The notes below the pieces were generated by a model. It searched no databases and was not told the origin of the DNA. It worked only from the letters and a program-made list of their open reading frames with translations. The position numbers and the translations under genes were made by a program. This document shows, piece after piece, positions 3,387-32,757 of a stretch of 64,000 bases of DNA; within the stretch, counting starts at the first letter, position 1, and every line of letters starts with the position of its first letter. Location: positions 62,001-126,000 of the IMG/VR virus record IMGVR_UViG_3300048924_000191; one strand, given 5' to 3'.

Positions 3387-4208
3387 TTACAGGGCGAAGT
3401 GGTAGAGCTGTCCTACGTCACCGACGTCGAGGAGCGGGTACGAGGTAGCTGATACCGAGAGGACCGGAACGTTAGCCCGCCCGACGTATGCGGAGCGCGA
3501 GAAGGTCATAGTTACGGTGAAGGTCTTTTCACGGCATGGGGTTACCTTGATCGGCAGCCCAATTCCGAAACGATGTAGCACTTCATCTACCGACAATAGA
3601 TACAACTGGTGTTGTTCGATCAGATACAGGTCGTTCTGATGCTTAACGTGGAAGAGACGATTGATTTCGTCTTGCAGATCTTTACGCAGTGCGATTCCGA
3701 AACCTGCTTCGAACCCGTCATTGATTGCTGCATTACGCAGGACGTTGTGCGGGGTGTTCGGGGTGTGGACGTGGTAGGCATGGCCGTAATCCGGGAGTTG
3801 GAAGACCACCTTCCGGAAGTCTCGCAACCACTCCAGAGCACTGACGATGGAAGTTTCCTTCACGCCACTCAGCGCCAGGCCCATGATCCCGTCAACAGGA
3901 GGGTTGTTGAGCACGTCATGGAATTCGACGTGAGGGTATTTACCGATCAACTCCTTCAACTTGCCATCATCGTCGATCGCCGCCCGTGCCAGCTCACGTA
4001 CCTGGTAGTTGCTGGTCGCAGCGTCCAGGTCGGCGATGACTTGCTTGATAGCTTCCGCACGACCTACGGCAATGGTACCGATACCACGGTAACCGATCAC
4101 TAAGTTGCTGATGTTGCGCACCGCTGTTTCTACAGCGTTGAGAGGACGGCGCGGCCAGTTACTTACGGCGTTAACGACACGGCGTTCTTCAGGGGACAGA
4201 TAGTTCAT
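3387..4208 (-). CDS. Hypothetical protein
   Basis: 273-aa ORF, AGGAG RBS, early-type promoter upstream. Confidence 0.75.
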   Translation of the reverse strand: MNYLSPEERRVVNAVSNWPRRPLNAVETAVRNISNLVIGYRGIGTIAVGRAEAIKQVIADLDAATSNYQVRELARAAIDDDGKLKELIGKYPHVEFHDVLNNPPVDGIMGLALSGVKETSIVSALEWLRDFRKVVFQLPDYGHAYHVHTPNTPHNVLRNAAINDGFEAGFGIALRKDLQDEINRLFHVKHQNDLYLIEQHQLYLLSVDEVLHRFGIGLPIKVTPCREKTFTVTMTFSRSAYVGRANVPVLSVSATSYPLLDVGDVGQLYHFAL

Positions 4209-4244
4209 TTGTCTTGCTCCTAATGGATGATGGTTAATCAAGAC

Positions 4245-4277
4245 TACAATGTATTACCAGCATATTTTTAAAGTTAC
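4245..4277 (-). promoter_or_regulatory. Putative early promoter
   Basis: GTAACTTTAAAAAT...TAATACATTGT matches the recurring intergenic motif. Confidence 0.55.
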
Positions 4278-4279
4278 AG

Positions 4280-4316
4280 CATACAGACCTCCTAGGACCG
4301 AAGCCCTAGGAGGTCT
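4280..4316 (-). terminator. Hairpin terminator plus GTATGC
   Basis: AGACCTCCTAGG/CCTAGGAGGTCT 12-bp stem. Confidence 0.8.
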
Positions 4317-4324
4317 ACACACCT

Positions 4325-4553
4325 TTTCTGACCGATACTTCATCCGTTAGCACATTCCCGCCCCGGCCACGAGAGAATATGCTAACGGCTGAGCGCTCAG
4401 TCTCCAGCTAGCCCCGCCGCTCCCCTTATAAGCGACGTGACTGAAGGTCGTCCGGGGGAACGACCTGCGGCGGCTCTACCCCGGGAGAGTCGGGACCCTG
4501 GGAGAGCTTGAATCGTACGGTTTGCCCAGAACCGTCCGAAGCATCCACGCATA
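4325..4553 (-). ncRNA. Candidate structured ncRNA 2 (~225 nt, closed multi-stem)
   Basis: 5' GAUGCUUC pairs with 3' GAAGUAUC; long internal stems; G-U wobbles valid on the minus strand; ATTATATG upstream, terminator downstream. Confidence 0.6.
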
Positions 4554-4586
4554 TAATAGTAAACGCTCAGTAAAAGTTTACTGCGA

Positions 4587-4994
4587 CTACCAGCCCATGG
4601 TTCTTGGGCGATTGAGCCACTCTTCGTAGACCTTTCCGTTAGCGGTGGTCTTACGTCCGCTCTTGTAGAACCCACTGGTCAGAAAGGCAGTTTGACTCGG
4701 TTTGTTCTCAGGTCTGATCCATGCCTGCCCTGCCTTGTTTGAAAAGTATTGACGGATGAACTGTGCCGCGTATCGCTTACCGCGGTGTTTTGGATCGATG
4801 TAGATAGACCCTACGCGATAATATCCGCCATCGCCTTTCATCGGCATGATGAACCCGATCGTCTCTCCAGTCGGGAGGAAGATGAGTTCCATGCCGTCAA
4901 GTCCAGCCTTGAGAGATTCTGGTCCAAGGAACGGGTCTTTCATGGCCAGATCAAAGAGTCTCTGTTTGGCGCCTTCTACTGTTTCTTTGTTCAT
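4587..4994 (-). CDS. GNAT-family acetyltransferase
   Basis: IYIDPKHRGKRYA (motif A), N..SQ..F...GF (motif B). Confidence 0.8.
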   Translation of the reverse strand: MNKETVEGAKQRLFDLAMKDPFLGPESLKAGLDGMELIFLPTGETIGFIMPMKGDGGYYRVGSIYIDPKHRGKRYAAQFIRQYFSNKAGQAWIRPENKPSQTAFLTSGFYKSGRKTTANGKVYEEWLNRPRTMGW

Positions 4995-5083
4995 GATTGG
5001 AGAACCGGGGAGGTGGTGACATAGCAGTCAAGACAAAAAAAAAGAAAGCCCAGTATAACCTTGCGGCTATACTGGGCGATTGC

Positions 5084-6409
5084 TTAGAGACCGTACTTCG
5101 AGGAAACCATCCATTTGACCGTTTGGCAGATGTTGTCCAGACTGCGTTCATCACCAATCAAACCAGAGCACACTGGTAGAGCATACGCAGGCATGACGAA
5201 CACTTCGACTGGATGTTCGTTGAGTTGCACCATACCCACGATTCTACCGGCCAAGTCCATATCGATCTTGACACGGTACTTGCTCACACCGTAGTACTCT
5301 CGCAGATCCGCCGAAGTTGGTTTCTTGGCACGGACTTCCAGTTCTGCTTCTTCTGGAGTCAGGAAGTCTTCAAAGTCCGAGCTATGCCACGACAACTCAG
5401 GATAGATCGCGCGGACAGTGCCGTTGACCTTGACCACTTCCCCATTGTCGTTGAACCATTCGGCCCATATGTGTTCCATCCCGAGGGATGCGGCTTCTGG
5501 AACCAGCTTCTTCAGATGGTCGTGGAAGATACGACGGGCTGCAGACGAGTGTCCGGTTTCTTCGACTACTTTGAGGTACTTGCGCTCCACAGAAATCTTG
5601 GAGTCTTCGGCGAGCATGTCGTTGAGTTCCTCGTAGGTGAAGAAGCCGTCGTACACCCAGTTGGTTCTGGCTGACAGTACGTCATACACCCGAGTGTGTT
5701 CGAACCTGACTGGCTCGAGTCGGTCCTCGACTTCCGAATAAATCTCGGCTTCTTCTCGGAAGATAGTCGGCCCCCCGCCGGTGGAGATCACGTTGTCGAT
5801 CGCTTTCTCAAGCCTGTCACAATAGAGTTCGGTATCGATATCAGCTATGTTCGCCGATACCGCGCGGTTGTTGATGACCCCGGTCAAGTTGCGGACATCG
5901 TGGTCATCCGGCACGAGGCTGCCGAACGTCAAGACTGAGTTGATGCGGCGCACTACCGAAGACGGGTCTTGACGGAATCCAGGGATGTCTCCTCGACCAC
6001 CCTTCGGTAACATGAGGGTGTCGTAGCGACTCGACAAGATCTCAGTAGCCTCGCTAAGCGGCATGCGATACATCGCCGAACGTAGTCCAACTACTCGGTC
6101 GATATAAAGCTTCGTTTCTGGGGTGAGTTCTTCGGTAGCCTCGCTGTGGCCGTAGACAACGCAGTGATCGCCACCTCGCATCGCATTATTCGGAAACGTG
6201 ACGGCGATCTTGAACGAGAACCGCTGCTTGTCCCAACCGCTCGCTACTTCGATCAGCGTTGCCGAATCGCGAGTGCGGGTATTACGCAAGGCGTTGAGTA
6301 AACCGACATCTGGACTGATGGGTGGGATACTGCCATCGACGACCGGATAAGCCACCTGAGGAGGCATTGGTTGGATAGCGTTGAACTGTACGTTAGCGGT
6401 AAGTTTCAT
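5084..6409 (-). CDS. Jumbo-phage protein, possible divergent paralogue of a Chimalliviridae core family (phiKZ gp69/Imp1/PicA-like)
   Basis: 441 aa, GGAG RBS; motif order GW...RF.F...V, VYG, F.Y.EL, DL.G....V...F..PAY recalled from that family; family call tentative. Confidence 0.35.
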   Translation of the reverse strand: MKLTANVQFNAIQPMPPQVAYPVVDGSIPPISPDVGLLNALRNTRTRDSATLIEVASGWDKQRFSFKIAVTFPNNAMRGGDHCVVYGHSEATEELTPETKLYIDRVVGLRSAMYRMPLSEATEILSSRYDTLMLPKGGRGDIPGFRQDPSSVVRRINSVLTFGSLVPDDHDVRNLTGVINNRAVSANIADIDTELYCDRLEKAIDNVISTGGGPTIFREEAEIYSEVEDRLEPVRFEHTRVYDVLSARTNWVYDGFFTYEELNDMLAEDSKISVERKYLKVVEETGHSSAARRIFHDHLKKLVPEAASLGMEHIWAEWFNDNGEVVKVNGTVRAIYPELSWHSSDFEDFLTPEEAELEVRAKKPTSADLREYYGVSKYRVKIDMDLAGRIVGMVQLNEHPVEVFVMPAYALPVCSGLIGDERSLDNICQTVKWMVSSKYGL

Positions 6410-24318: not shown

Positions 24319-24798
24319 CTAGGTTTTGTTGCTGGCGGCATTCTGCTTGGCGATCAGATGGGTCACCGACATACCGGCAAAGATCCCATTTATCTCGCAT
24401 CTGAGCGCCGTCTCTTCAGCCAGTAGGGAATTGCATTTATCTTTGATCTCAACGATCTTGGCTTGACGAGACATCAGGTTATCGACACATTCGTCGTAAT
24501 ACTCGTCGTCATGGTTGCGCAACCATGTCAACTCACGAATGAAGTGCTCTTCCCGCAGTCTGACGTAACGTTTGTTGAGATACGCCACGGTCGATTTGAA
24601 TATTCGGGACAGGCAGAAACTGACCAGTACCGCATAGAACATCACCAACTCAACTTTCCCGGGTAATGCGTGGAGAAAGAGGAGAGTGGTTGCGATCACA
24701 ACAGCGGTGAAGATGAGGAATAAGATCAGTTCCCGCAACATCTGACGCAACTTCCAGTTGGAGTGTGTGCCAGCATGGGCGAATTCGTATGGAGTCAT
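24319..24798 (-). CDS. Two-TM membrane protein with coiled-coil tail
   Basis: AAGGAA RBS before MTPYEF. Confidence 0.65.
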   Translation of the reverse strand: MTPYEFAHAGTHSNWKLRQMLRELILFLIFTAVVIATTLLFLHALPGKVELVMFYAVLVSFCLSRIFKSTVAYLNKRYVRLREEHFIRELTWLRNHDDEYYDECVDNLMSRQAKIVEIKDKCNSLLAEETALRCEINGIFAGMSVTHLIAKQNAASNKT

Positions 24799-24818: not shown

Positions 24819-24848
24819 AGGGCGGGGAAATCCCCGCCCTGTATGCCG
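24819..24848. terminator. Hairpin terminator
   Basis: AGGGCGGGGA/TCCCCGCCCT then GTATGCCG. Confidence 0.75.
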
Positions 24849-25982
24849 TTAACGTCCGCCGAAGCCTGCGCGCTGGCGACCTTTGCGGAATTCGAGGTTC
24901 TCGTGCCAGTTCAGAGCTTCTGCGAGGGTGAACTTGTTGCGACCTTCTGGGAAGACCACCTCGTGTTCGCAGTGCATCATTTCGCGAACCGCGATCGCCT
25001 GCTCCAGATCCAGGTGTTTGAACTCCAGGATGTCGAAGCAACGACCACCACGGGTGAGCGCCTCGTCGACCTTGTGGAGACTTTCCAGGTTGGTCGAGAT
25101 GATGATCTTGGTATCACGAGAAACGATACCGTTTGCCGCGCTGAGCATCGCCTGCATGTTGGAGTTACCCAGATCACGAGCTTCGACCAACTTGTCGGAG
25201 TCTTCGGTAACGAAGATTGCACCAGAACGCAGACCGCGGATGTAGTCAGCCAGAGATGGGTTCAGGAGAACGTCTTCACGGTCAGCCATGTGGGCGTTAT
25301 CGTCAGCGAAGTTTGCGACGTGCAGAAGCTCGGTAATCCAGTTGGACTTGCCGGTGCCTGGCGGACCGATCAGCAGGACGACGTTGGAGTTGGACGCCTT
25401 GAACTCCTGCCAGAAAGCGGCCGGTAATTGACGCGGTTCGAAGTACGGGTACATCTTCTGGATATCGGAGATCGCTTGCCGTGGAGCAATCGGTTCCCAG
25501 CCCGGGATGATACCGCCGTTACCGTTCAGGGTCAGACGGGTCATGACCGGCACTTTATCCGACTTGGCCAGTTCGGCGAATTGACCGGTGACGTAGTCCA
25601 CCAGCTTCTTACCGCCCAGCAGGTCGTAGAACGCTTTGGTGTTCTCGTTCTTGACGTTCACCAGGGCACCGAACACTTCATCGTCAGAAACGATCAGGCG
25701 GCCCATGATGACGCGAACGAAGCGCAGACCTGCGGGCTTGAGGATCTCTTCTTCGAAGATCCGCAAGATGACCGTGTCGTTGTCTTCCGGTTTGATATTC
25801 AGCGGAACGTTGGTCTCCAGCTTCTTCTGCACGCAGTTGATACCACGGCCTGCAAAGAACAGGCGAGATACGTCGTACAGGTTGTCGCCGCGCAGCAGCG
25901 CCAGACGCTCGGAGAAGAAGTGGATCTCTTCCAGCAGTTTCTGGGAGGCTTGTGGTTCACGGAAAATATTCAGATTAGTCAT
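24849..25982 (-). CDS. AAA+ ATPase
   Basis: GPPGTGKS, FVTEDSD (Walker B), IISTN...DEALTRGGRCFD (second region of homology). Confidence 0.88.
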   Translation of the reverse strand: MTNLNIFREPQASQKLLEEIHFFSERLALLRGDNLYDVSRLFFAGRGINCVQKKLETNVPLNIKPEDNDTVILRIFEEEILKPAGLRFVRVIMGRLIVSDDEVFGALVNVKNENTKAFYDLLGGKKLVDYVTGQFAELAKSDKVPVMTRLTLNGNGGIIPGWEPIAPRQAISDIQKMYPYFEPRQLPAAFWQEFKASNSNVVLLIGPPGTGKSNWITELLHVANFADDNAHMADREDVLLNPSLADYIRGLRSGAIFVTEDSDKLVEARDLGNSNMQAMLSAANGIVSRDTKIIISTNLESLHKVDEALTRGGRCFDILEFKHLDLEQAIAVREMMHCEHEVVFPEGRNKFTLAEALNWHENLEFRKGRQRAGFGGR

Positions 25983-25991
25983 GCTGCTTCC

Positions 25992-26294
25992 TTACTTACG
26001 GTCTAGTGGTAGTGGTTGAACATTATGTTGCAAAAAGCGATCGGTCTCGTCGTAGTCCGGACCACCCAACTGGTCCTCGAGGTCATGGAACTCAGCGCGA
26101 GTTAACCGAGTACGGCAGGATGAAGCGTTGTCGCGGTACTGTACACGCATACCGCCGGTACGTACCTCTTCGCCGAGACTCTCTCCGTCCTGCACGCGAT
26201 GGGGTATGTCGTGATCGTCTGCTCCCAGGGATGCGCGGATAGATGATGTTGAAGTGCGGTCTTTCTTGCGGTTGGTTAGGTCGGTAAATTTCAT
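25992..26294 (-). CDS. RKK-motif small acidic protein 7
   Basis: MKFTDLTNRKKDR. Confidence 0.7.
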   Translation of the reverse strand: MKFTDLTNRKKDRTSTSSIRASLGADDHDIPHRVQDGESLGEEVRTGGMRVQYRDNASSCRTRLTRAEFHDLEDQLGGPDYDETDRFLQHNVQPLPLDRK

Positions 26295-26304
26295 GATCAG
26301 TCGT

Positions 26305-26562
26305 CTACCTACTCACGTAAGGATTGAAGTAACCCGAATTCCACGACTGATGCATGCGGATAGGATCTTCATCGATACTCACCGATCGTTCGGTTCCAGC
26401 TCGTCGAGATTTCGGCGATCTGTAAACAACAGCACCGCCAAACTTAGGATCAGTCCTCGTACCGTCCATATCGACAGGCTCATCTCTGGTGTCATCCGTT
26501 CCCCAGAATTGGCGGTCGTACGACGGGCGGTCGACACACTTCTTACGGTTAATGTCAGACAT
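26305..26562 (-). CDS. RKK-motif small protein 6
   Basis: MSDINRKKCVD; start 26562 or 26571. Confidence 0.7.
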   Translation of the reverse strand: MSDINRKKCVDRPSYDRQFWGTDDTRDEPVDMDGTRTDPKFGGAVVYRSPKSRRAGTERSVSIDEDPIRMHQSWNSGYFNPYVSR

Positions 26563-26893
26563 CGGCCTCATCCCTCATCCCCGGCCACGGTTCAGGGAAC
26601 TTGCCTGGCGGACATGCTTGTATCGGAATCATCATCTCCTTAGGCATTTCTCGCCAGTTGGTAGCCAAGTCGAAGTGCCCGTCTTCAGCGCAGTGTTCGC
26701 GAAGCTGGTCCTGATCCCATACGCCGCATTCAGGTTCTGCATACTCGTGGTCATCATCGGCGTTGTGCTGATGGGTGTCGGCATGTACGTCGGGATCGTA
26801 AGGAACTTCCCCAACGAATTCCTCAACCACGCAGGACCCACGAAAGACCTGTTGTAACGGCACGCGTTTCTTTCGGAACACACTCCTGTTCAT
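26555..26893 (-). CDS. RKK-motif small acidic protein 5
   Basis: MNRSVFRKKRV...PYDPD. Confidence 0.75.
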   Translation of the reverse strand: MNRSVFRKKRVPLQQVFRGSCVVEEFVGEVPYDPDVHADTHQHNADDDHEYAEPECGVWDQDQLREHCAEDGHFDLATNWREMPKEMMIPIQACPPGKFPEPWPGMRDEADV

Positions 26894-27240
26894 TTGTCCC
26901 TCCCTTCCCCGTCGTGATATCCATACGCGGCGTTGATGTCTGGCTCATCATCACCTATTCCTTCCGGAAACCAGGGAACGTGACTAACTTCCCTGAGCTG
27001 GTTTGAATTGTGCCAACCACCGTCACCATCGCCATCGCGATTGGTATCCATGTCTAGCCCCATGTCGTAGTCGTCAGGGTCTCCAGGACCGAAGTCGTCC
27101 ATTTGGAAAATGCACGAGTCAGGTCTCTCTTCGATGTCGATGACGACAGCCTCATGGAACTCCGGAATATAGCCGGAACCTCTGACGAAAGCTTCCAGCG
27201 TCAACTCCTTCTTGCGGTAGAGCTTATGCCTGGCCATCAT
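26890..27240 (-). CDS. RKK-motif small acidic protein 4
   Basis: MMARHKLYRKKEL...GYIPE. Confidence 0.75.
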   Translation of the reverse strand: MMARHKLYRKKELTLEAFVRGSGYIPEFHEAVVIDIEERPDSCIFQMDDFGPGDPDDYDMGLDMDTNRDGDGDGGWHNSNQLREVSHVPWFPEGIGDDEPDINAAYGYHDGEGRDK

Positions 27241-27500
27241 CCACCTCTAGCGAAGTCACACACCAAGTCACGGTTCTGACCGCGGAGTAGACTGGTACCG
27301 TGCCCATAATCGGGATCTCGAACCCGACCGCCGTCACCCTCATGTTGGAACATTCGGCTTTCGACCGAATGTGAGGACATCGTGTGGTTCACCATCTCAG
27401 GATCGAAGGGGAGATCGGTCAACGTCTCGCCGTCATGTAGACCGCGTTCGTTGATAGTGGTTGCAACACCGTCGTATTTCTTTCTTTCAAATCGTGGCAT
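27237..27500 (-). CDS. RKK-motif small acidic protein 3
   Basis: MPRFERKKYD...PFDPE. Confidence 0.75.
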   Translation of the reverse strand: MPRFERKKYDGVATTINERGLHDGETLTDLPFDPEMVNHTMSSHSVESRMFQHEGDGGRVRDPDYGHGTSLLRGQNRDLVCDFARGG

Positions 27501-27503
27501 GGT

Positions 27504-27758
27504 CTAATCCCAGTTAAGTCCTCGGCACAACCACCGACCTTCGTATTCTTCGGCGAAGTGCTCATCACGGATCACATCTCCATCGACGTCACGGAACACG
27601 GATGTAGAATCGAGGTCGCTGCGGTTATCTACCGTACGGTTAGAAGTCGCGGCGTCACCCACAGTCTCAGGATCGAATGGAGGTTCGCAAGACAACCCTA
27701 AGACCGCTGCGTTTTCGTCGATGAGCTTCTTTCTATCGTACGGGAATTTAGTCGACAT
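27504..27758 (-). CDS. RKK-motif small acidic protein 2
   Basis: MSTKFPYDRKKLI...PFDPE. Confidence 0.75.
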   Translation of the reverse strand: MSTKFPYDRKKLIDENAAVLGLSCEPPFDPETVGDAATSNRTVDNRSDLDSTSVFRDVDGDVIRDEHFAEEYEGRWLCRGLNWD

Positions 27759-27979
27759 CAGCGCTCTCCTTCGTCACCGTCGTCCTGATCGCAATCCGGT
27801 CCTAGTTGTTCGAAGTCACCGTCACCCGGTGGCGTACGGTATTCATCTACAGACATTTCCGTCTCATCGCCGGTTGATTGACTGTCGTCATAAAGGTCAG
27901 CTGGAGAATCGGCAGAGCCGACCCTCCATAGCTGCTCCCGACACCCTGCTTTCTTACGGTTGACGTCAACCACGGTCAT
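27758..27979 (-). CDS. RKK-motif small acidic protein 1
   Basis: MTVVDVNRKKAGCRE. Confidence 0.75.
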   Translation of the reverse strand: MTVVDVNRKKAGCREQLWRVGSADSPADLYDDSQSTGDETEMSVDEYRTPPGDGDFEQLGPDCDQDDGDEGER

Positions 27980-28184
27980 CGAAAATCACCTCGTTACGGT
28001 GCTCCGTTCGAGCAGGTATTTCGTCGTTCTGATCGTCATGGTAAACTTCCGACCGCACGCCGAAATAACCGGTCCCATCCATGTCTATTAACGGGATGTC
28101 GTCCAACCGGTACATTTCGCGACAGGATTTGAACGGACAACTGACCGGCTTAGCGTCCAATAGATCTACTGATCGCCTGGCCAT
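27966..28184 (-). CDS. Small acidic protein heading the RKK array (no RKK)
   Basis: Shares CRE and DMDGT with array members. Confidence 0.6.
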   Translation of the reverse strand: MARRSVDLLDAKPVSCPFKSCREMYRLDDIPLIDMDGTGYFGVRSEVYHDDQNDEIPARTEHRNEVIFDDRG

Positions 28185-28666
28185 ACGAGCGCATCCGCTT
28201 TACCAGTGAAGACCAGCCATGCGCACTTGAAGCGCTGACGAAGAGTGGCGTAACCAATACCACGCGCTGGAATAAAGATGTCGCCGTGACGTATGGTGGT
28301 TATTGGTTGGTCACCATCGTGATCACCTTTACGGTTCCAGTGACCGGTGGGGAACTGTACGCTCGACAGATTGACGACGTTCGGATACTTGGCTTCGTAA
28401 CGACGGTCGCAGAGGTATTCGACGACCAGTGCGATTACCAGCAGCCCGCAGTACACTGCCAGACAGCAGACTACCAATGGCCAGAGTGCGTAGCACCAGT
28501 AGCGCTGCTCATCGCTGAGGGAGATCAGGCCGGCATGTCGATTCTGCCATGCGTACGGGCGCTTCTTGTAGTACGCTCGTTCCTTGAGAAACAGGATCAC
28601 GGCACCGAACCCCCAGATTGTAAACATCGCCAACGTGGCGAGGATAGCGTTAGTGCTGAACTCCAT
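28166..28666 (-). CDS. Two-TM protein with phage-type C-terminal domain
   Basis: TM segments; PAR...R.K.AW.VFTGKADAL.WP. Confidence 0.65.
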   Translation of the reverse strand: MEFSTNAILATLAMFTIWGFGAVILFLKERAYYKKRPYAWQNRHAGLISLSDEQRYWCYALWPLVVCCLAVYCGLLVIALVVEYLCDRRYEAKYPNVVNLSSVQFPTGHWNRKGDHDGDQPITTIRHGDIFIPARGIGYATLRQRFKCAWLVFTGKADALVWPGDQ

Positions 28667-29350
28667 TTAGAAGATCTCCAATGTTTCGAGGTTGATGAGG
28701 GTGAGGTCGCGATCTTCCTTACCGCCTGTGGTGTCGATGTAATACGTATTGCCGAGCACGGTGACTTCGTCAACCGGTATATGCCCAACGATCACCGCAC
28801 GGATATTCTTGACCGGTTCGGTATTTGACAGCGCATAGCGATCTTGAGACCAGAGGCAGCAATGCAACTGCTGTTTGAGTTTCTTCCCCTTGGCGTTGTT
28901 GAGGTTGTCGATCATGTCGTTCCAGTCGAGGTTGACGCACTCGGCGTGAACGATGCCGACTTTCCCTTTGGAGGTCTCGACTTCGATGACGGCGGGGAGT
29001 TCCTTGAACGCTTCGGCATACTCACGGCGTTGCGCTTGGGTCAGGTCGTAGAACCATTCCGTACCGTGTCTACCCCACCGATGTGGCGGGATGTTCGCAT
29101 AGCCGATCAGCAGTTCTTCGTGGTTGCCTTTGATGGCGTTGAACCACAGATACCTCAGATACTGAAGAATCAAGTAACTCTCAGGTCCGCGGTCCACCAG
29201 ATCACCGGCTGGGAAGAGTCTGTCCACTTCAGGATCAAACCCAACCTTGTCCAGCTTGTGGGCTAGACGCGTGAACCAGCCGTGAATGTCCCCCACTCCG
29301 AAGTCACGACCCTTCGTATTACGCTTGAAGGTCCTGACTAACTTGCTCAT
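28667..29350 (-). CDS. Ser/Thr protein phosphatase (lambda NinI/PrpA-like metallophosphoesterase)
   Basis: GDIHG, GDLVDRGP, GNHE, VHA, VGH, IDT. Confidence 0.92.
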   Translation of the reverse strand: MSKLVRTFKRNTKGRDFGVGDIHGWFTRLAHKLDKVGFDPEVDRLFPAGDLVDRGPESYLILQYLRYLWFNAIKGNHEELLIGYANIPPHRWGRHGTEWFYDLTQAQRREYAEAFKELPAVIEVETSKGKVGIVHAECVNLDWNDMIDNLNNAKGKKLKQQLHCCLWSQDRYALSNTEPVKNIRAVIVGHIPVDEVTVLGNTYYIDTTGGKEDRDLTLINLETLEIF

Positions 29351-29913
29351 CAGCTTTCACTCTCAGGTGGGGTGTACAGAGTGGTAAAGCCCAGAGCGGT
29401 GAGTTGCTCGTGGAGGTGAAGAATCAGTGCCGGCTCGAGCAAACCTTTGCAGGTGCTGAGCATGTAGACAACCGATTCGTGCCGATTCGGATCGACCAGT
29501 TTGGCGTAACAGTCTTCGGTATGAAATCCGACCACCTGTTGGGCCAATTCGATCCCTTCAACTACTGACTTGTAGATGCCGAGATCGACGACGTGGAGCA
29601 TCGGTTGCTTGGTCACTTGTGGGATCGATGCTTTCACCGAGTAGCTAGAACCGGCGGTTAGGTCCGCAACCTCATTTAGGTGTGCTTCGGCCAAACGGAA
29701 ATGAGGTTGCGGATCGTTACGCTGAAATGCGTAATTACGCAGCAACCATTCGCGGAAGCCGATACCTTCTTCAGCAACGTGGTGGACTTGAGACCCAGGA
29801 GTGGTCAGCGAGTAGTCTAGCGGATTACGTTTGTTGGGTTCGTGCACCACCAAACGTACGTGAGCTTCACTGTGCTCATTGGCTTCGCGCTTCGACAGAT
29901 GGACAATAATCAT
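29350..29913 (-). CDS. Hypothetical protein
   Basis: AAGGA RBS before MIIVH. Confidence 0.65.
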   Translation of the reverse strand: MIIVHLSKREANEHSEAHVRLVVHEPNKRNPLDYSLTTPGSQVHHVAEEGIGFREWLLRNYAFQRNDPQPHFRLAEAHLNEVADLTAGSSYSVKASIPQVTKQPMLHVVDLGIYKSVVEGIELAQQVVGFHTEDCYAKLVDPNRHESVVYMLSTCKGLLEPALILHLHEQLTALGFTTLYTPPESES

Positions 29914-29923
29914 GCTGGTTTCC

Positions 29924-30505
29924 TTACACGAGAAAGTAGTTGGAATTTCCGACGCGTTGACCGCCCATGCGTTCAGGACCACGGGCAATCTTCAATAGTT
30001 CGAGCATACCGCTGAAACCACGGTTGGTGAAGAGCATCACTTCACACTCCAGCTCATGGAGGTTGAGGTGGTTCATCACAGCGTGAGCCATGGCGAGTTT
30101 CATCTCGTCTTCGTTGGCGCGAATCCAGTCCATCTCCTCGTCCCGCTCTTTGATGAGTATAGACTTCGGTTTGGTAGGCTCCTGCTCCATCCGCACTTTG
30201 AGACCTTCGATTTCGATCTGTACGCCGTAGGCTTCGCCGTTGTACAGGACCATGCCTGGGAAGCCTTCATCCGAAAGCTCTGTAGCGACCTGCGACAACT
30301 CACTGTCTTGAATGGCTACGTTCCAGATGGCTTCCTTATAGGTCTTGTATTTGGTTTGCAGGATGTCCATTTGCACGCCTTGCTTGGCGTGGGGTTGGCA
30401 GCGCTTCAGCACCTTGAGAATGAGTTTCTTCATCTCTTTTTCAGGATGGAAAGTCGCCATCAGGACCAGCGTGTCGATTGCTTCAGCTCCGGTGTAATTG
30501 TACAT
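29924..30505 (-). CDS. Hypothetical protein
   Basis: First gene after promoter at 30541. Confidence 0.7.
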   Translation of the reverse strand: MYNYTGAEAIDTLVLMATFHPEKEMKKLILKVLKRCQPHAKQGVQMDILQTKYKTYKEAIWNVAIQDSELSQVATELSDEGFPGMVLYNGEAYGVQIEIEGLKVRMEQEPTKPKSILIKERDEEMDWIRANEDEMKLAMAHAVMNHLNLHELECEVMLFTNRGFSGMLELLKIARGPERMGGQRVGNSNYFLV

Positions 30506-30540
30506 CGCCTAAGTTCCAAGTGTTATCCATATGACAGGCT

Positions 30541-30568
30541 AGTAATGTAGGATCATACAAAAATAAAA
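30541..30568 (-). promoter_or_regulatory. Putative early promoter of the phosphatase-RKK array-AAA unit
   Basis: TTTTATTTTTGTATGATCCTACATTAC. Confidence 0.6.
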
Positions 30569-30570
30569 GA

Positions 30571-30602
30571 CATACAGCCCGGGGTTTCCCCCGGGCTGTA
30601 TG
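30571..30602. terminator. CATACAG...CTGTATG hairpin terminator
   Basis: Perfect stem. Confidence 0.85.
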
Positions 30603-30609
30603 CTGCTAG

Positions 30610-30702
30610 TTACTGCTTCAGCTTCTTCAGATCCTGAGCAAACGCGACAAGGCCGCGAATGGACAGAACCGCCACTACGATAAAGCCAATGGTTGAGAGC
30701 AT
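30610..30702 (-). CDS. 30-aa membrane peptide (not in ORF track)
   Basis: MLSTIGFIVVAVLSIRGLVAFAQDLKKLKQ; AAGGAG RBS. Confidence 0.55.
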   Translation of the reverse strand: MLSTIGFIVVAVLSIRGLVAFAQDLKKLKQ

Positions 30703-30705
30703 GAT

Positions 30706-32757
30706 TTACTCCTTGGATTGATCCTCACTCGAAGGCGCATCGGTCTGGGACGCTTCGAGGTGTTGGAAGTGAGGGGTTTGACCACGACCGTAACTGGCGA
30801 CCTCGGTTTCGGGTTCGGCGCTTACCGCTCCAGGCTGGAAGCCGAGTTCCTGACCTGGGCCATCGACGAATTCCTTCAGCTGTGACGCTACCGAAGGACC
30901 TTTCGGGCGAACGGCATTCGCCACCAGGCTGTCAGCGGTGGTACCAGGCTCGTCGAAGAGGTCGGTGCCATCAGCCTCGATGAACTGACCTGGAGTGTAA
31001 GCTCCGAGATCACGCGCCGCTTGAGCCGCTTCGATCAGGTCATCCCACGAAGTTTCCGGAGACGTGAACACGCTCTGGAAGTGCAGGAGTGCCTGTTCTT
31101 TCTCGTGTTCAGAACCTTCTTCCAGCTCGTCAGGTTCCGGCGGGGTGAAACCAGCCTCTTTCAGGAGGAACGCGACCGTACCGTGCGGGTCCTTGTCTTC
31201 AGGATCGAGAGTCAGATTGATAACTCGTTTGACCGGACGGTCGTTGAGTTCCCAAATAACTTCTTCCAGACGCACGAATTCGTTATTGAATTCATCCGGG
31301 GTAGTGACTCGTAAGATGCCGGCGGCATCGTCCAATTGAGGTCTGATGTACGCCCAGGCGCCGTGTTGAATCAACTGCGCGCCTTCCCCGTGTTTGGAAA
31401 CCACTGCGGCAACACCATCAACCAGAACATCGTAGCGGTAATGTTTGCAGAGAGCGACGAATCGACCCGGATCTTCCTGAAGGAATTGTTCGGCCTCGAA
31501 TACCCCACCGACCTTATACCGCCCTTCGAGAGGGGTATTGCGAGCCATGTTTATGTACTGAGTAGGCGTGAACTCGACCTCATCGGAGTTAAGGTCCGGC
31601 CATCCGGCAAGACTTTCAGCCAACTCGCGCAGTTCTTCGAAGTCGCTACCTGGGTCAGAGTGGGTCGCAACCACCTTGCGGAAAGCTTCGGTGTAGCACA
31701 TGCCCTGATCCAGATATTCCTGGTACAGGCGACGAGCTTCGGTTACCGGTGCGTTACTGGTGGTCTTGGTCTGGAACTTCGACGGATCAACAGTGGTTAC
31801 ACCAGGGATGTCGTTCAAGTCGAGAACAACTTCCGGCTTACGCTCGTCAGCGGTTTTGAAATCACGCAGGCGCAGGCTTTCGAACGGATTAGTCTTACCG
31901 GCCGCATCAACCACCCGCACACTACCCAGCCACCAGTGACCCACTTGCACGACTGAGATCAGCCTGAGGTAAGCGCTGTTGTCTTCGTCACGGCGGTTCT
32001 CGAAAGCCAACTCAACGAAGTCTGGCTTGGAGGTCCAGTCTTTGATGAACGGATGATCGAACAGCTCTTCACGAGTGGAGAACTGGAACTTCTGCAACAT
32101 CGTTTCCGGAATACCTTGACCACCTTCGCGGAACTCGAAGACCGTTTTCGGTTCGACCCAGGTAGGTAGATCCAGCAAGTCGAAGTCGTGGGCGGCGGCT
32201 TCGATGCGCGCCACGACGAAGAACTTACCGTTTTTCATCTCTGCCATCAGATGACTGATGTCGTCGTGGCGCCACAGGGAGAAACGGTTGAACCCGTCAG
32301 TCTTCCAGTCAGCGACGAATGGAAGGACTTCGATCTCGGCCCAGGAATCGACGTAAACGTCAACCGATGGCTCAGTGCGATCGACGAAACTAGGAAGGTG
32401 TTGAATCACACGGAATGGTTTCACGGGAGTTTCCTCGGTGGTCAGAACGGGGAGGTCGGTGATCACAGGCAGACCGAGCGCTGCGAGCGGCTGATCGCCG
32501 AGTGCGCTGACGGTCGCGATGGTGCGAATTTCGTTATCAAGCCCGAAAATTCCAACCAACGATGCTTTGGTTGGATTGACATCAGCGGGATCGAAGTACT
32601 TGATCGCGAAGTGACGGAAGCTGAAATAGCCGACCGCGTTCATGATGAACGTGGCATTGAGTGCCGACTGCCAGTTGTCGACGGTGACTTCGTCCGGCAC
32701 TGGGCCGCCGTTCTGACCTTCTATTTCTGGCGAGAAATATTCTACGAACTTGTACAT
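30706..32757 (-). CDS. 683-aa acidic multidomain protein with three N-terminal repeats
   Basis: Repeats V.VD.W/F.F.T..EL...PF(I/V)..W.....F. Confidence 0.8.
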   Translation of the reverse strand: MYKFVEYFSPEIEGQNGGPVPDEVTVDNWQSALNATFIMNAVGYFSFRHFAIKYFDPADVNPTKASLVGIFGLDNEIRTIATVSALGDQPLAALGLPVITDLPVLTTEETPVKPFRVIQHLPSFVDRTEPSVDVYVDSWAEIEVLPFVADWKTDGFNRFSLWRHDDISHLMAEMKNGKFFVVARIEAAAHDFDLLDLPTWVEPKTVFEFREGGQGIPETMLQKFQFSTREELFDHPFIKDWTSKPDFVELAFENRRDEDNSAYLRLISVVQVGHWWLGSVRVVDAAGKTNPFESLRLRDFKTADERKPEVVLDLNDIPGVTTVDPSKFQTKTTSNAPVTEARRLYQEYLDQGMCYTEAFRKVVATHSDPGSDFEELRELAESLAGWPDLNSDEVEFTPTQYINMARNTPLEGRYKVGGVFEAEQFLQEDPGRFVALCKHYRYDVLVDGVAAVVSKHGEGAQLIQHGAWAYIRPQLDDAAGILRVTTPDEFNNEFVRLEEVIWELNDRPVKRVINLTLDPEDKDPHGTVAFLLKEAGFTPPEPDELEEGSEHEKEQALLHFQSVFTSPETSWDDLIEAAQAARDLGAYTPGQFIEADGTDLFDEPGTTADSLVANAVRPKGPSVASQLKEFVDGPGQELGFQPGAVSAEPETEVASYGRGQTPHFQHLEASQTDAPSSEDQSKE

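What the first reader, a model, noticed from the sequence alone, without database searches (positions are those of the whole stretch)
24849..28184. Tandem array of small acidic proteins sharing an N-terminal R-K-K tag, followed directly by an AAA+ ATPase
Seen: seven consecutive, tightly packed or overlapping ORFs (73-116 aa) carry RKK within residues 6-11: TNRKK, INRKK, VFRKK, LYRKK, FERKK, YDRKK, VNRKK. The codons differ, so conservation is at protein level. Bodies are D/E/G/P-rich, look disordered and are otherwise divergent, with only patchy shared motifs (PFDPE, PFDPE, PYDPD; RGS in two neighbours; DMDGT in 26305 and 27966; CRE in 27758 and 27966; QLRE in two). Each has at least one Cys. 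An eighth acidic ORF without RKK heads the array. The unit appears to run from the promoter at 30541 through a Ser/Thr phosphatase, the array and the AAA+ ATPase to the terminator at 24819. Inference: a constant tag plus variable acidic body suggests a library of clients recognised by one machine. Options: substrates/adaptors of the AAA+ ATPase, a phage-nucleus localisation signal, leader-bearing peptide precursors, or a diversified panel of nucleic-acid-mimic inhibitors of host defence. I know no described system with this layout.
Basis: partly seen in the sequence, partly recalled or inferred. Interest (0 to 1): 0.9.

Follow-up and report, generated by a model that had tools for sequence, protein, structure and literature searches.

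The report
RKK-tagged small-protein array beside Bcs1-like ATPase
An early operon of an uncultivated phiKZ-like jumbo phage holds a fast-evolving tandem family of small, acidic, disordered proteins that all keep an N-terminal Arg-Lys-Lys motif and always sit next to, and in two lineages are fused to, a soluble Bcs1-like AAA ATPase, which suggests an undescribed set of clients or adaptors for a phage protein-handling machine.

Summary
Only 7 of the window's 325 ORFs of at least 60 aa have RKK in their first 14 residues, and they are the seven consecutive ORFs at 25992-27979. Five different Arg codons are used, so the motif is conserved at the protein level. The same arrays (3-12 called units) lie directly upstream of the orthologous ATPase in 10 other non-redundant metagenomic jumbo-phage loci from three clades. 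Two lineages have the last unit fused in frame to the ATPase. The proteins are Asp/Arg-rich, predicted disordered, and diverge much faster than the ATPase. The acidic 'head' ORF is a family member whose RKK has decayed. The ATPase is an orthologue of phiKZ gp208. It is a soluble Bcs1/YjoB-like AAA protein, a kind already noted in jumbo phages. A conserved phiKZ-type early promoter precedes the operon. My best reading (about 0.45) is that the RKK motif docks these proteins to the ATPase as clients or adaptors. A general phage-nucleus signal, RiPP precursors and classic DNA mimics are not supported. The family has no annotation and only about 30 representatives among 1.8 billion proteins. Its function is untested.

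The parts
30570..30603 (-). Intrinsic terminator of the upstream transcription unit (15-bp stem, T tract)
   Evidence: scan and sequence. The same hairpin-plus-T-tract module precedes the operon in L024, L025, L026 and L028.
30527..30569 (-). Candidate early (virion-RNAP type) promoter: T-rich stretch, TACATTAC (30542-30549), then ATATGG
   Evidence: The element is nearly identical in W, L024, L025, L026 and L028. The phiKZ early promoter is TATATTAC and the EL one is ..CCTACATTATY (PMC7058600 Table 2). phiKZ early promoters have a T-rich region plus an extended -10 (PMC8244752). Only 2 copies occur in the window. Function is not tested.
29924..30505 (-). First ORF of the operon, 193 aa, no known family
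   Evidence: ORFs of similar size (about 190-200 aa) occupy the same position in L024, L025 and L026; homology was not tested.
29350..29913 (-). Second ORF, about 187 aa from the internal ATG (the listed TTG start at 29988 would overlap the previous gene), no known family
28667..29350 (-). Metallophosphatase, NinI-like Ser/Thr protein phosphatase
   Evidence: PF00149 E 1.4e-14. phrog_246 E 2.7e-59. Same position in L024, L025, L026 and L028.
28166..28666 (-). Predicted membrane protein, 166 aa, conserved between phosphatase and array
   Evidence: Hydropathy. Counterparts with similar N-terminal hydrophobic sequence sit in L025, L026 and L028. C-terminus matches phrog_21988.
27966..28184 (-). 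Array unit 1: subfamily-A member with decayed tag (DAK instead of RKK); keeps DD and I-D-M-D-G
   Evidence: Its counterpart L025:4244-4465 has TLRKK.
27758..27979 (-). Array unit 2, 73 aa, VNRKK, pI 4.05
27504..27758 (-). Array unit 3, 84 aa, YDRKK; subfamily B (PFDPE; D-x-D-x-x-R; C-terminal CRGLNWD)
27237..27500 (-). Array unit 4, 87 aa, FERKK; subfamily B (PFDPE)
26890..27240 (-). Array unit 5, 116 aa, LYRKK; subfamily B-like (RGS; D-x-D-x-x-R)
26555..26893 (-). Array unit 6, 112 aa, VFRKK; subfamily B (PYDPD; RGS; D-x-D-x-x-R)
26305..26571 (-). Array unit 7, 88 aa (or 85 aa from the second Met), INRKK; subfamily A (DD; V-D-M-D-G), pI 8.9
25992..26294 (-). Array unit 8, 100 aa, TNRKK; subfamily A (R+11, DD, D-x-D-x-x-R, HN, C-terminal DRK); the unit next to the ATPase, which is the position fused to the ATPase in other lineages
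   Evidence: AF2 mean pLDDT 58, pTM 0.21.
24849..25982 (-). Soluble Bcs1/YjoB-like classical AAA ATPase; orthologue of phiKZ gp208 and Phabio gp308
   Evidence: PF00004 30.1 bits. phrog_14322 E 5e-94. tblastn 44% to Phabio and 37% to phiKZ. Best PDB sequence hit is Bcs1. The AF2 model of the fused orthologue P0010 best matches Bcs1 by Foldseek at E 3e-12 over 409 columns, then YjoB. No TM segment.
24819..24840 (-). GC-rich hairpin just after the ATPase stop, without U tract
   Evidence: -20.6 kcal/mol, z -4.06. Not called by the terminator scan.
24319..24798 (-). Predicted membrane protein, 159 aa, conserved directly downstream of the ATPase in the window clade

Best explanation
The region is one early operon of an uncultivated phiKZ-like jumbo phage. 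Its order is promoter, two unknown ORFs, a Ser/Thr phosphatase, a membrane protein, eight paralogous small proteins, then a soluble Bcs1/YjoB-like AAA ATPase.

The small proteins are a birth-and-death family of intrinsically disordered, Asp/Arg-rich polypeptides of about 65-115 aa. What selection keeps is a few short linear motifs. The main ones are the N-terminal D-h-x-N-R-K-K-x8-R segment, where h is a hydrophobic residue, and a C-proximal D-x-D-x-x-R.

I propose that the basic N-terminal segment is the docking element that binds each family member to the N/middle-domain chamber of the neighbouring ATPase ring. The variable acidic body would be what is being handled (cargo) or what selects a target (adaptor). 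The ATPase would hold, remodel or translocate them using ATP. The family diversifies because its targets are host factors in an arms race.

Shown: the family, its motifs, protein-level conservation, rapid divergence and copy-number change, the fixed adjacency to the ATPase and the fusions with it, the ATPase fold class, and the early-type promoter element.

Inferred: physical binding through RKK, the cargo or adaptor role, early timing, and any host target.
For: 1. Tag specificity. 7 of 7 in the window against 0 of 318 other ORFs. 39 of 79 inside arrays against 1 of 459 outside in related loci. 66 of 88 members have exact RKK against 1.6 expected from shuffles. Arg sits at residue 5-13 in 57 of 59.
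2. Protein-level selection, shown by codon diversity.
3. Genomic coupling. The array lies directly upstream of the ATPase in the window, L024-L029, L005, L031-L033 and L035. The ATPases of these loci are 46-70% identical to the window's.
4. Two different in-frame fusions of the last unit to the ATPase N-terminus. The 451-aa form is kept in three separate 90%-identity clusters that are 74-77% identical to each other. The fused unit retains both RKK and D-x-D-x-x-R.
5. Disorder. 79 of 81 members fall in the Uversky disordered zone. AF2 gives pLDDT 58 for the free protein and below 50 for the fused extension.
6. Rapid evolution. ATPase 80.5% against array 30-52% (L026/L027), and 70% against 31-38% (W/L029). 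Called copy number is 3-12, with truncated remnants present.
7. ATPase class. Bcs1 then YjoB are the best structural matches. Bcs1 binds its cargo by charge complementarity to an acidic surface patch (PMC12219900). YjoB is a soluble chaperone with an internal chamber (PMC9565160).
8. Three Asp positions (about 68, 173 and 228) are conserved in 12-13 of 13 array-associated ATPases and replaced in the array-less ones. This is weak because it is confounded by phylogeny.
Against: - No direct test of binding was possible. Only single chains could be modelled, and AF2 did not dock the fused RKK segment on the ATPase with any confidence.
- Orthologous ATPases exist without RKK arrays: phiKZ, HHBS36_1, XbC2, MJ359 and L034. 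L030 and Phabio have other small proteins instead. The ATPase therefore does not need RKK proteins.
- Adjacency could reflect only shared early-operon membership.
- An in-frame fusion has about a 1 in 3 chance once a stop codon is lost. The L005 fusion also keeps a Shine-Dalgarno sequence and ATG for independent ATPase initiation.
- Profile-profile comparison does not prove that the subfamilies are homologous beyond the short motifs.
- phiKZ orf208 tolerates a transposon insertion (PMC12676376).
Confidence: 0.45

Rival explanations
1. Independent early effectors. The small proteins are a diversifying family of host-takeover or anti-defence proteins, and their RKK and D-x-D-x-x-R motifs bind a host target or nucleic acid. 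The ATPase is just the next gene in a conserved early operon and does not touch them.
For: Rapid divergence, copy-number turnover and pseudogene remnants are typical of arms-race genes. An early-type promoter is present. ATPase orthologues function without such arrays in phiKZ and others. No modelled contact between tag and ATPase.
Against: Adjacency is kept in three clades although the upstream context differs: Metallophos versus DSPc phosphatase versus helicase. Two separate in-frame fusions to the ATPase are retained. No member was seen away from an ATPase among the loci that could be inspected.
Confidence: 0.3
2. Capsid-targeted, injected internal proteins, analogous to phage T4 internal proteins. 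RKK would be a capsid-targeting sequence, and the Bcs1-like ATPase would load the proteins into proheads, as Iyer et al. proposed for phage BCS1 orthologues.
For: The logic matches T4's hypervariable internal-protein locus, where a shared N-terminal targeting peptide sits on diverse small proteins (my own knowledge of T4 biology). The published hypothesis is that jumbo-phage BCS1 translocates folded proteins packaged into the head (PMC7824862). A Peptidase_S80-like gene lies two genes downstream of the ATPase in clade 2.
Against: The operon carries an early-type promoter, not a late one. No consistent protease site (S/A/G-x-E in phiKZ, L/I-x-E in T4, from my own knowledge) follows the tag by inspection. 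The S80-like protein is a partial hit that falls below Pfam threshold in L005, and it is absent next to the window's ATPase. No virion data exist, because no cultured phage has the array.
Confidence: 0.1
3. Phage-nucleus (or early infection vesicle) localisation signal. RKK marks proteins for import into a phage compartment, with the ATPase as the motor.
For: The genome is related to nucleus-forming phiKZ-like phages. Bcs1 is a translocase for folded proteins. Membrane proteins flank the array and the ATPase.
Against: No other ORF of at least 60 aa in the 64-kb window has the tag, including the helicase, DNA ligase, thymidylate synthase and thymidylate kinase. The ATPase has no membrane anchor. 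My literature searches found no paper reporting a linear signal or an AAA motor for phage-nucleus import. The phiKZ orthologue is dispensable.
Confidence: 0.06
4. Leader-bearing peptide (RiPP-like) precursors, or a purely nucleotide-level signal (A-rich translation enhancer or RNA-binding site) that merely reads as RKK.
For: The tag is short and at a fixed distance from the start. The first Lys codon is almost always AAG.
Against: No RiPP-type enzyme was found in the operon by Pfam or PHROGs. Arg uses five codons from two codon families, and the second Lys uses both codons. The AAG bias is genome-wide for Lys-Lys pairs. The bodies are 60-110 aa and carry further conserved motifs.
Confidence: 0.03

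Closest known systems
Mitochondrial Bcs1 and Bacillus subtilis YjoB (Bcs1-like AAA chaperones/translocases); phage BCS1 orthologues noted by Iyer et al. 2021
   Same: The ATPase has the same two-part build: a beta-rich N/middle domain plus one classical AAA domain. These are its best sequence and structure matches. Bcs1 binds an acidic cargo surface. YjoB is soluble with an internal chamber. BCS1 orthologues were already reported in jumbo phages.
   Different: No transmembrane anchor. No Bcs1_N Pfam match among those listed at E<=1. Oligomer state and clients are unknown. No array of tagged small proteins has been described next to any Bcs1-like protein.
phiKZ gp208 (PHIKZ208) and Phabio gp308
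   Same: Orthologous ATPase: 37% and 44% identity over 95-98% of the length, phrog_14322.
   Different: phiKZ has no small-protein array beside it. Phabio has a different small paralogue set (gp302-306, E-A-R-V-E-N motif) separated from the ATPase by an RNA ligase. phiKZ orf208 tolerates a transposon insertion.
Phage T4 internal proteins and their hypervariable locus with the N-terminal capsid-targeting sequence
   Same: Tandem, rapidly diversifying small proteins that share only a roughly 10-residue N-terminal address (my own knowledge of T4 biology; analogy only).
   Different: No sequence relationship. No conserved protease site after the tag. Early-type rather than late promoter. Coupled to an AAA ATPase, which T4 does not use for this. 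No virion evidence.
AAA+ cofactors that dock through short basic linear motifs (p97/Cdc48 VIM and VBM motifs; the SspB tail on ClpX)
   Same: Variable partners share a short, Arg/Lys-containing motif that binds the ATPase N-domain (my own knowledge). This is what the RKK...R segment is proposed to do.
   Different: No homology, and binding is untested here. The partners here are encoded as a tandem array and are disordered throughout.
Type VII secretion substrates (about 100-aa WXG100 proteins encoded beside the EccC/EssC ATPase, recognised by a terminal signal)
   Same: Small proteins of about 100 aa encoded next to the ATPase that recognises a terminal signal (my own knowledge; analogy).
   Different: A different ATPase superfamily (FtsK/SpoIIIE). 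The substrates are folded helical hairpins with a C-terminal signal. It is a cellular secretion system.

Membership tests
Classical AAA ATPase (PF00004) | Walker A GxxGxGK[ST], Walker B hhhhDE, sensor-1 Asn, and a second region of homology with Arg fingers | tested here: met
   GPPGTGKS, VTEDSD, STN and ALTRGGR are all present and invariant or nearly so in the 26-sequence alignment A5. PF00004 scores 30.1 bits against a cut-off of 21.2.
Bcs1/YjoB-like AAA | Beta-rich N/middle domain preceding a single AAA domain, alignable to Bcs1 over both domains | tested here: met
   The AF2 model of the fused orthologue P0010 has pLDDT about 90 for the ATPase part. Foldseek ranks Bcs1 entries 1-10 (E 3e-12 to 5e-10, 281-409 aligned columns), then YjoB. 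TM-scores are low (0.30-0.45), so the match is at fold level, not close.
Bcs1/YjoB-like AAA | N-terminal transmembrane anchor (Bcs1 proper) | tested here: not met
   The maximum 19-residue hydropathy is 1.27 and no window reaches 1.6. In this respect it resembles soluble YjoB.
Bcs1/YjoB-like AAA | Heptameric or hexameric ring with a substrate chamber | not testable with these tools
   Only single chains can be modelled.
T4-type internal proteins with a capsid-targeting sequence | Conserved N-terminal peptide followed by a prohead-protease cleavage site; presence in virions; late expression | tested here: not met
   A conserved N-terminal peptide is present. However, no consistent L/I-x-E or S/A/G-x-E site follows it, and the promoter is of the early type. 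Virion content cannot be tested.
RiPP precursor peptides | Leader-bearing precursors encoded with a modifying enzyme or recognition element | tested here: not met
   No such enzyme was found among the operon genes by Pfam or PHROGs.
DNA-mimic anti-restriction proteins (Ocr/ArdA type) | Strongly acidic, stably folded protein with a DNA-like charge array | tested here: inconclusive
   Median pI is 5.0 and the bodies carry a net charge of about -6, but Arg is 9.9%. No confident fold: pLDDT 58, pTM 0.21. No Pfam or PHROG match.
General phage-nucleus import signal | The signal is shared by proteins expected inside the compartment (replication and DNA-metabolism enzymes) | tested here: not met
   None of the other ORFs of at least 60 aa in the window has RKK in its first 14 residues, including the helicase, DNA ligase, thymidylate synthase and thymidylate kinase.
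RKK small-protein family (defined here) | 60-120 aa; RKK or a near variant with Arg at residue 5-13; D-x-D-x-x-R at 60-80% of the length; encoded in tandem directly upstream of the gp208-type ATPase | tested here: met
   Seven window ORFs meet the tag criterion, and the eighth has a decayed tag but keeps the subfamily-A motifs. A subfamily-A profile finds only 32 proteins at E<1e-3 among 1.84 billion representatives, of which 28 are 63-101 aa long as in the family.

The most novel reading that the evidence does not exclude
The array is a cargo library for a phage-encoded translocase of the Bcs1 type. RKK (with D-x-D-x-x-R) would then be the first linear address signal found for a virus-encoded protein-transport machine in bacteria. 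The soluble ATPase, perhaps docked on the flanking conserved membrane proteins, would deliver these diversifying disordered effectors into a compartment (capsid, early infection vesicle, phage nucleus or envelope) to disarm host defences.
Probability: 0.2. Interest if true: 0.9.

Novelty: new variant of a known kind. Interest (0 to 1): 0.72.

Why it matters
Bcs1-like AAA ATPases are widespread in jumbo phages, yet none has a known client, and the phiKZ orthologue has no assigned role. This locus offers candidate partners written next to the gene, and in two lineages fused to it. The 3-residue tag can be mutated, which makes the function of this ATPase class directly testable.

The small proteins are also a new, unannotated family of disordered proteins that keep only short linear motifs while turning over quickly. 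That is the signature of viral proteins that engage host factors, so they are candidates for new anti-defence or host-takeover activities. If the tag proves to be an address signal, it would be a portable handle for directing proteins to a phage machine.

Tried and rejected
- Near-identity DNA search of the region against cultured phages found no match.
- Pfam and PHROGs scans of all eight small proteins found no family.
- Pairwise BLAST among the small proteins of the window, L005 and Phabio gave only weak paralogue pairs between neighbours. There was no one-to-one orthology between clades.
- hhalign between subfamily profiles was not significant: E 0.21 and 0.044, with only the motif segments aligning.
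- AF2 of the natural RKK-ATPase fusion, run to see whether the tag docks, modelled the extension at pLDDT below 50, so it gives no information on docking.
- AF2 of a subfamily-A member with 26 sequences gave no fold.
- The profile search of 1.84 billion proteins produced, besides family members, only DUF7151 repeat proteins and a plant sequence matching the DD...D-x-D-G stretch. I judged these chance or compositional matches.
- Searching IMG/VR with two new family members (P0067, P0059), to find arrays without an ATPase, returned nothing.
- TAYATTAC is not a recurrent motif in the window: 2 sites against 1.06 expected. The promoter assignment therefore rests on cross-locus conservation and similarity to published consensus sequences, not on repetition within the window.
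- The idea that AAG at the first Lys reflects an RNA signal was rejected, because the genome-wide Lys-Lys dicodon bias explains it.
- XbC2, MJ359 and HHBS36_1 were checked for arrays, and none was found.
- No paper was found on gp208 function, on a linear phage-nucleus signal, or on an AAA motor for import.

Full report
**What is in the window**

On the minus strand between 30.6 kb and 24.3 kb lies a tightly packed run of genes:
- two ORFs of unknown function (29924-30505 and about 29350-29913);
- a NinI-like metallophosphatase at 28667-29350 (PF00149 E 1.4e-14, phrog_246 E 2.7e-59);
- a predicted membrane protein at 28166-28666;
- eight small ORFs from 28184 down to 25992;
- a 377-aa AAA ATPase at 24849-25982;
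- a GC hairpin, then another predicted membrane protein at 24319-24798.

The eight small ORFs all start with ATG. They overlap by 1-17 nt or are separated by 3-10 nt.

Yes. Seven consecutive ORFs carry RKK with the Arg at residue 6-9. Among all 325 ORFs of at least 60 aa in six frames of the 64-kb window, these seven are the only ones with RKK in the first 14 residues. They hold 7 of the 15 RKK triplets found anywhere.

The Arg codon varies within the window (CGT, AGA, CGC, CGA). Over 59 family members from related loci it is AGA 17, AGG 2, CGA 10, CGC 15 and CGT 15. The second Lys is AAA 36 and AAG 23. The first Lys is almost always AAG (57 of 59). This is a genome-wide habit for Lys-Lys pairs, with AAG first in 34 of 37 pairs in other window genes, probably to avoid A runs. 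The motif is therefore selected as protein sequence.

**Where the window comes from**

The window is part of IMG/VR contig UViG_3300048924_000191, 243 kb. No cultured phage matches at the DNA level. Its helicase and ATPase find phiKZ-like jumbo phages of Proteobacteria at about 37-44% identity. The ATPase is the orthologue of phiKZ gp208 and Phabio gp308.

**Comparative genomics of the array**

A protein search found ATPase relatives at 45-70% identity in metagenomes, and I fetched their contexts. Directly upstream of the ATPase, on the same strand, arrays of small ORFs with the same N-terminal motif occur in the loci below.

| Clade | Loci with an array | Upstream context |
|---|---|---|
| Window clade | L024, L025, L026, L027, L028, L029 | Metallophosphatase and membrane protein, wherever the contig reaches far enough (L024, L025, L026, L028) |
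| Second clade | L005/L009, L031, L032, L033 | DSPc-type phosphatase further upstream (L005, L032, L033; the L031 contig ends before that point) |
| Third clade | L035 (308-kb contig) | Helicase |

- Called copy number ranges from 3 to 12.
- Gaps inside arrays hold further uncalled units and truncated remnants, for example a unit ending in two stop codons right after RKKDVA in L025.
- In these loci 39 of 79 ORFs inside arrays carry RKK in the first 14 residues, against 1 of 459 outside. That one abuts an array.
- Of 88 collected members, 66 have exact RKK (shuffles give 1.6). Most of the rest have near variants (RKQ, RKN, SKK, TKK, RPK).
- Loci with more distant ATPases lack RKK arrays: L034, phiKZ, HHBS36_1, XbC2 and MJ359. 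L030 has other small acidic ORFs, and Phabio has a different paralogue set, gp302-306.

**Fusions**

In L005, L031 and a third sequence (P0010-12, 451 aa, 74-77% identical to each other), the last array unit reads in frame into the ATPase. In L035 (P0019, 437 aa) a different last unit does the same. The fused units in P0010-12 keep both RKK and D-x-D-x-x-R. The L005 fusion retains a Shine-Dalgarno sequence and ATG at the normal ATPase start, so both forms may be made.

**Anatomy of the small proteins**

- They are 63-116 aa, with a median of 82. Asp makes up 13.9% and Arg 9.9%. The median pI is 5.0.
- The first 20 residues carry a net charge of +1.7 and the rest -6.4. 79 of 81 fall in the disordered zone of the charge-hydropathy plot.
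- AF2 gives no confident fold: mean pLDDT 58 and pTM 0.21 with a 26-sequence alignment. The fused extension scores pLDDT below 50.
- Around the tag the consensus is D(-3), hydrophobic(-2), N(-1), R-K-K, then Arg at +11 in 29 of 59.
- A second motif, D-x-D-x-x-R, lies at 60-80% of the length in 54 of 88 members (shuffles 12.5 +/- 3.1). DP[ED] occurs in 45 of 88 (9.1 expected).
- Subfamily A comprises the units nearest the ATPase, including window units 25992, 26305 and the 'head' ORF 27966. Its motif order is RKK, R, DD, h-D-x-D-G, R-x-R, D-x-D-x-x-R, HN, then a C-terminal DRG.
- Subfamily B includes window units 27504, 27237, 26555 and 26890. Its motif order is RKK, RG, P-[FY]-D-P-E, D-x-D-x-x-R, then a C-terminal CRG-h-NW.
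- The head ORF has simply lost the tag (DAK). Its counterpart L025:4244-4465, the first unit of that array with a near-identical N-terminus, has TLRKK.
- Profile-profile comparison between subfamilies aligns only the motif segments and is not significant. 'Constant short motifs on otherwise unalignable bodies' is therefore an accurate description.
- The family evolves much faster than its neighbours. The ATPases of L026 and L027 are 80.5% identical, while their array counterparts are 30-52%. For the window against L029 the figures are 70% and 31-38%.
- A subfamily-A profile found only 32 proteins at E<1e-3 among 1.84 billion representatives. 28 of these are 63-101 aa long, as in the family, and none carries a name.

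**The ATPase**

It has all the classical AAA motifs. Its best solved relatives by sequence are Bcs1. I modelled the fused orthologue P0010, and the ATPase part has pLDDT of about 90. Foldseek ranks Bcs1 entries 1-10 over both the N/middle and AAA domains (E 3e-12 to 5e-10), then B. subtilis YjoB, then proteasomal and Cdc48 ATPases.

The window ATPase has no transmembrane segment, so it resembles soluble YjoB more than membrane-anchored Bcs1. Three papers bear on this class:
- Bcs1 binds its folded cargo through charge complementarity to an acidic patch (PMC12219900).
- YjoB is a substrate-specific chaperone with an internal chamber (PMC9565160).
- BCS1 orthologues have been noted in jumbo phages and proposed to translocate folded proteins destined for the head (PMC7824862).

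phiKZ orf208 tolerates a transposon insertion. It also appears in the results table of an antisense-oligomer knock-down screen of phiKZ genes with a single '+' (PMC12676376 and PMC12571901).

The extreme C-terminus has an invariant Gly-Phe, whose role is unknown. Three Asp positions are conserved only in array-associated ATPases. This is suggestive, but it is confounded by phylogeny.

**Regulation**

Upstream of the operon there is a strong terminator (30603-30570), a T-rich stretch, and TACATTAC (30549-30542). This whole module is nearly identical in L024, L025, L026 and L028. Related elements sit directly before the arrays in L005 and L031 (ATACATTAC) and in L035 (TATATTAC).

Published early-promoter consensus sequences are TATATTAC for phiKZ and ..CCTACATTATY for EL (PMC7058600). 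phiKZ early promoters have a T-rich region and an extended -10 (PMC8244752). I infer early transcription. This is not measured, and the motif is not repeated in the window beyond chance. The hairpin after the ATPase is stable but has no U tract.

**Interpretation**

The data establish a new, rare protein family defined by short linear motifs. It undergoes birth-and-death evolution, and it is genetically tied to a Bcs1/YjoB-like ATPase by fixed adjacency across differing contexts and by two fusions.

I consider the most likely mechanism (0.45) to be that the basic N-terminal segment docks these disordered acidic proteins to the ATPase's N/middle-domain chamber, as cargo or as interchangeable adaptors. 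The family would diversify against host targets.

The main rival (0.30) is that they are independent early effectors that merely share an operon with the ATPase. The other readings fare worse:
- A T4-like capsid-targeting role (0.10) fits a published idea for phage BCS1. It fits poorly with the early-type promoter and the lack of a protease site.
- A general nucleus-import signal (0.06) is disfavoured, because no other ORF of at least 60 aa in the window carries the tag, including the helicase, ligase and thymidylate enzymes.
- RiPP precursors or an RNA-level signal (0.03) are contradicted by the neighbourhood and the codon data.

**Novelty and verdict**

The ATPase type is known. The array, its motifs and its coupling to the ATPase are not described in any paper or family library I could search. 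I rate it a new variant of a known kind, namely an AAA machine with motif-tagged partners and a hypervariable phage small-protein locus. There is a 0.2 chance that it is something categorically new: an address-signal-based phage protein-delivery system. Interest 0.72.

Noticed in passing
window 30527-30603 (-); L024 about 4080-4170; L025 2180-2289; L026 2318-2451; L028 403-500: A nearly identical module of terminator hairpin, T tract, GTATGATC, TACATTAC and ATATAG is conserved across phages whose proteins are only 50-70% identical. This non-coding element is far better conserved than the genes around it.
   Followed up: partly
window 28667-29350; L005 3048-3506; L032 3000-3434; L033 2887-3324; L038 4072-4488: A protein phosphatase recurs in the same operon upstream of the gp208-type ATPase, but from unrelated folds. 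It is a metallophosphatase in the window clade and a Cys-based DSPc type (HCxxGxxR) in the second clade and in cultured phage HHBS36_1. This looks like a non-orthologous replacement and hints at a functional link.
   Followed up: partly
L005 9136-11747; L031 4814-6779; L032 8155-10605; L033 8156-10778: In the second clade the ATPase is followed by an 83-86-aa protein, a 146-156-aa protein with a partial Peptidase_S80 (phiKZ prohead protease family) match, and a second, different 377-aa AAA ATPase. No counterpart lies immediately downstream of the window's ATPase.
   Followed up: partly
L025 6037-6121; L026 5224-5415 and 6437-6689; L028 3409-3653 and 5342-5612; L032 6018-6464: The 'intergenic' gaps inside arrays contain uncalled RKK units and truncated remnants (one has stop codons right after RKKDVA). 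Gene calls therefore undercount the family, and units are being born and lost.
   Followed up: partly
L001 (Phabio) 4046-5381: Phabio gp302-306 are five small paralogues (82-92 aa) upstream of its gp208-type ATPase. They share a different motif (E-A-R-V-E-N near residue 20-30) and are separated from the ATPase by an RNA ligase. They may be a diverged or replaced counterpart of the RKK array.
   Followed up: partly
window 30610-30702 (-): A 30-aa hydrophobic ORF ends just before the terminator. 31-aa ORFs are called at the same position, just before the terminator-promoter module, in L025 and L026.
   Followed up: no
window 24849-25982, last residues; alignment A5: All 26 ATPase homologues end with an invariant Gly-Phe within 0-4 residues of the C-terminus. 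A terminal docking motif of this kind is used by other AAA proteins to bind partner rings. No partner was identified.
   Followed up: no
window 53686-55296 (-); L032 1-1536; L033 1-1679: The thymidylate synthase has a long extra N-terminal region: 536 aa in the window, with the synthase match starting near residue 224. In the second clade the protein is 739-744 aa.
   Followed up: no
L024-L029, 5-7 kb downstream of the ATPase; L028 10407-11264: QueC-like (faint) and dCTP-deaminase-like genes recur downstream. L028 has a weak AcrVA2-like Pfam hit. These may relate to DNA modification and anti-CRISPR functions in the same genomic neighbourhood.
   Followed up: no
window 30706-32757 (-): A 683-aa ORF upstream of the operon has no Pfam or PHROG match.
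   Followed up: no
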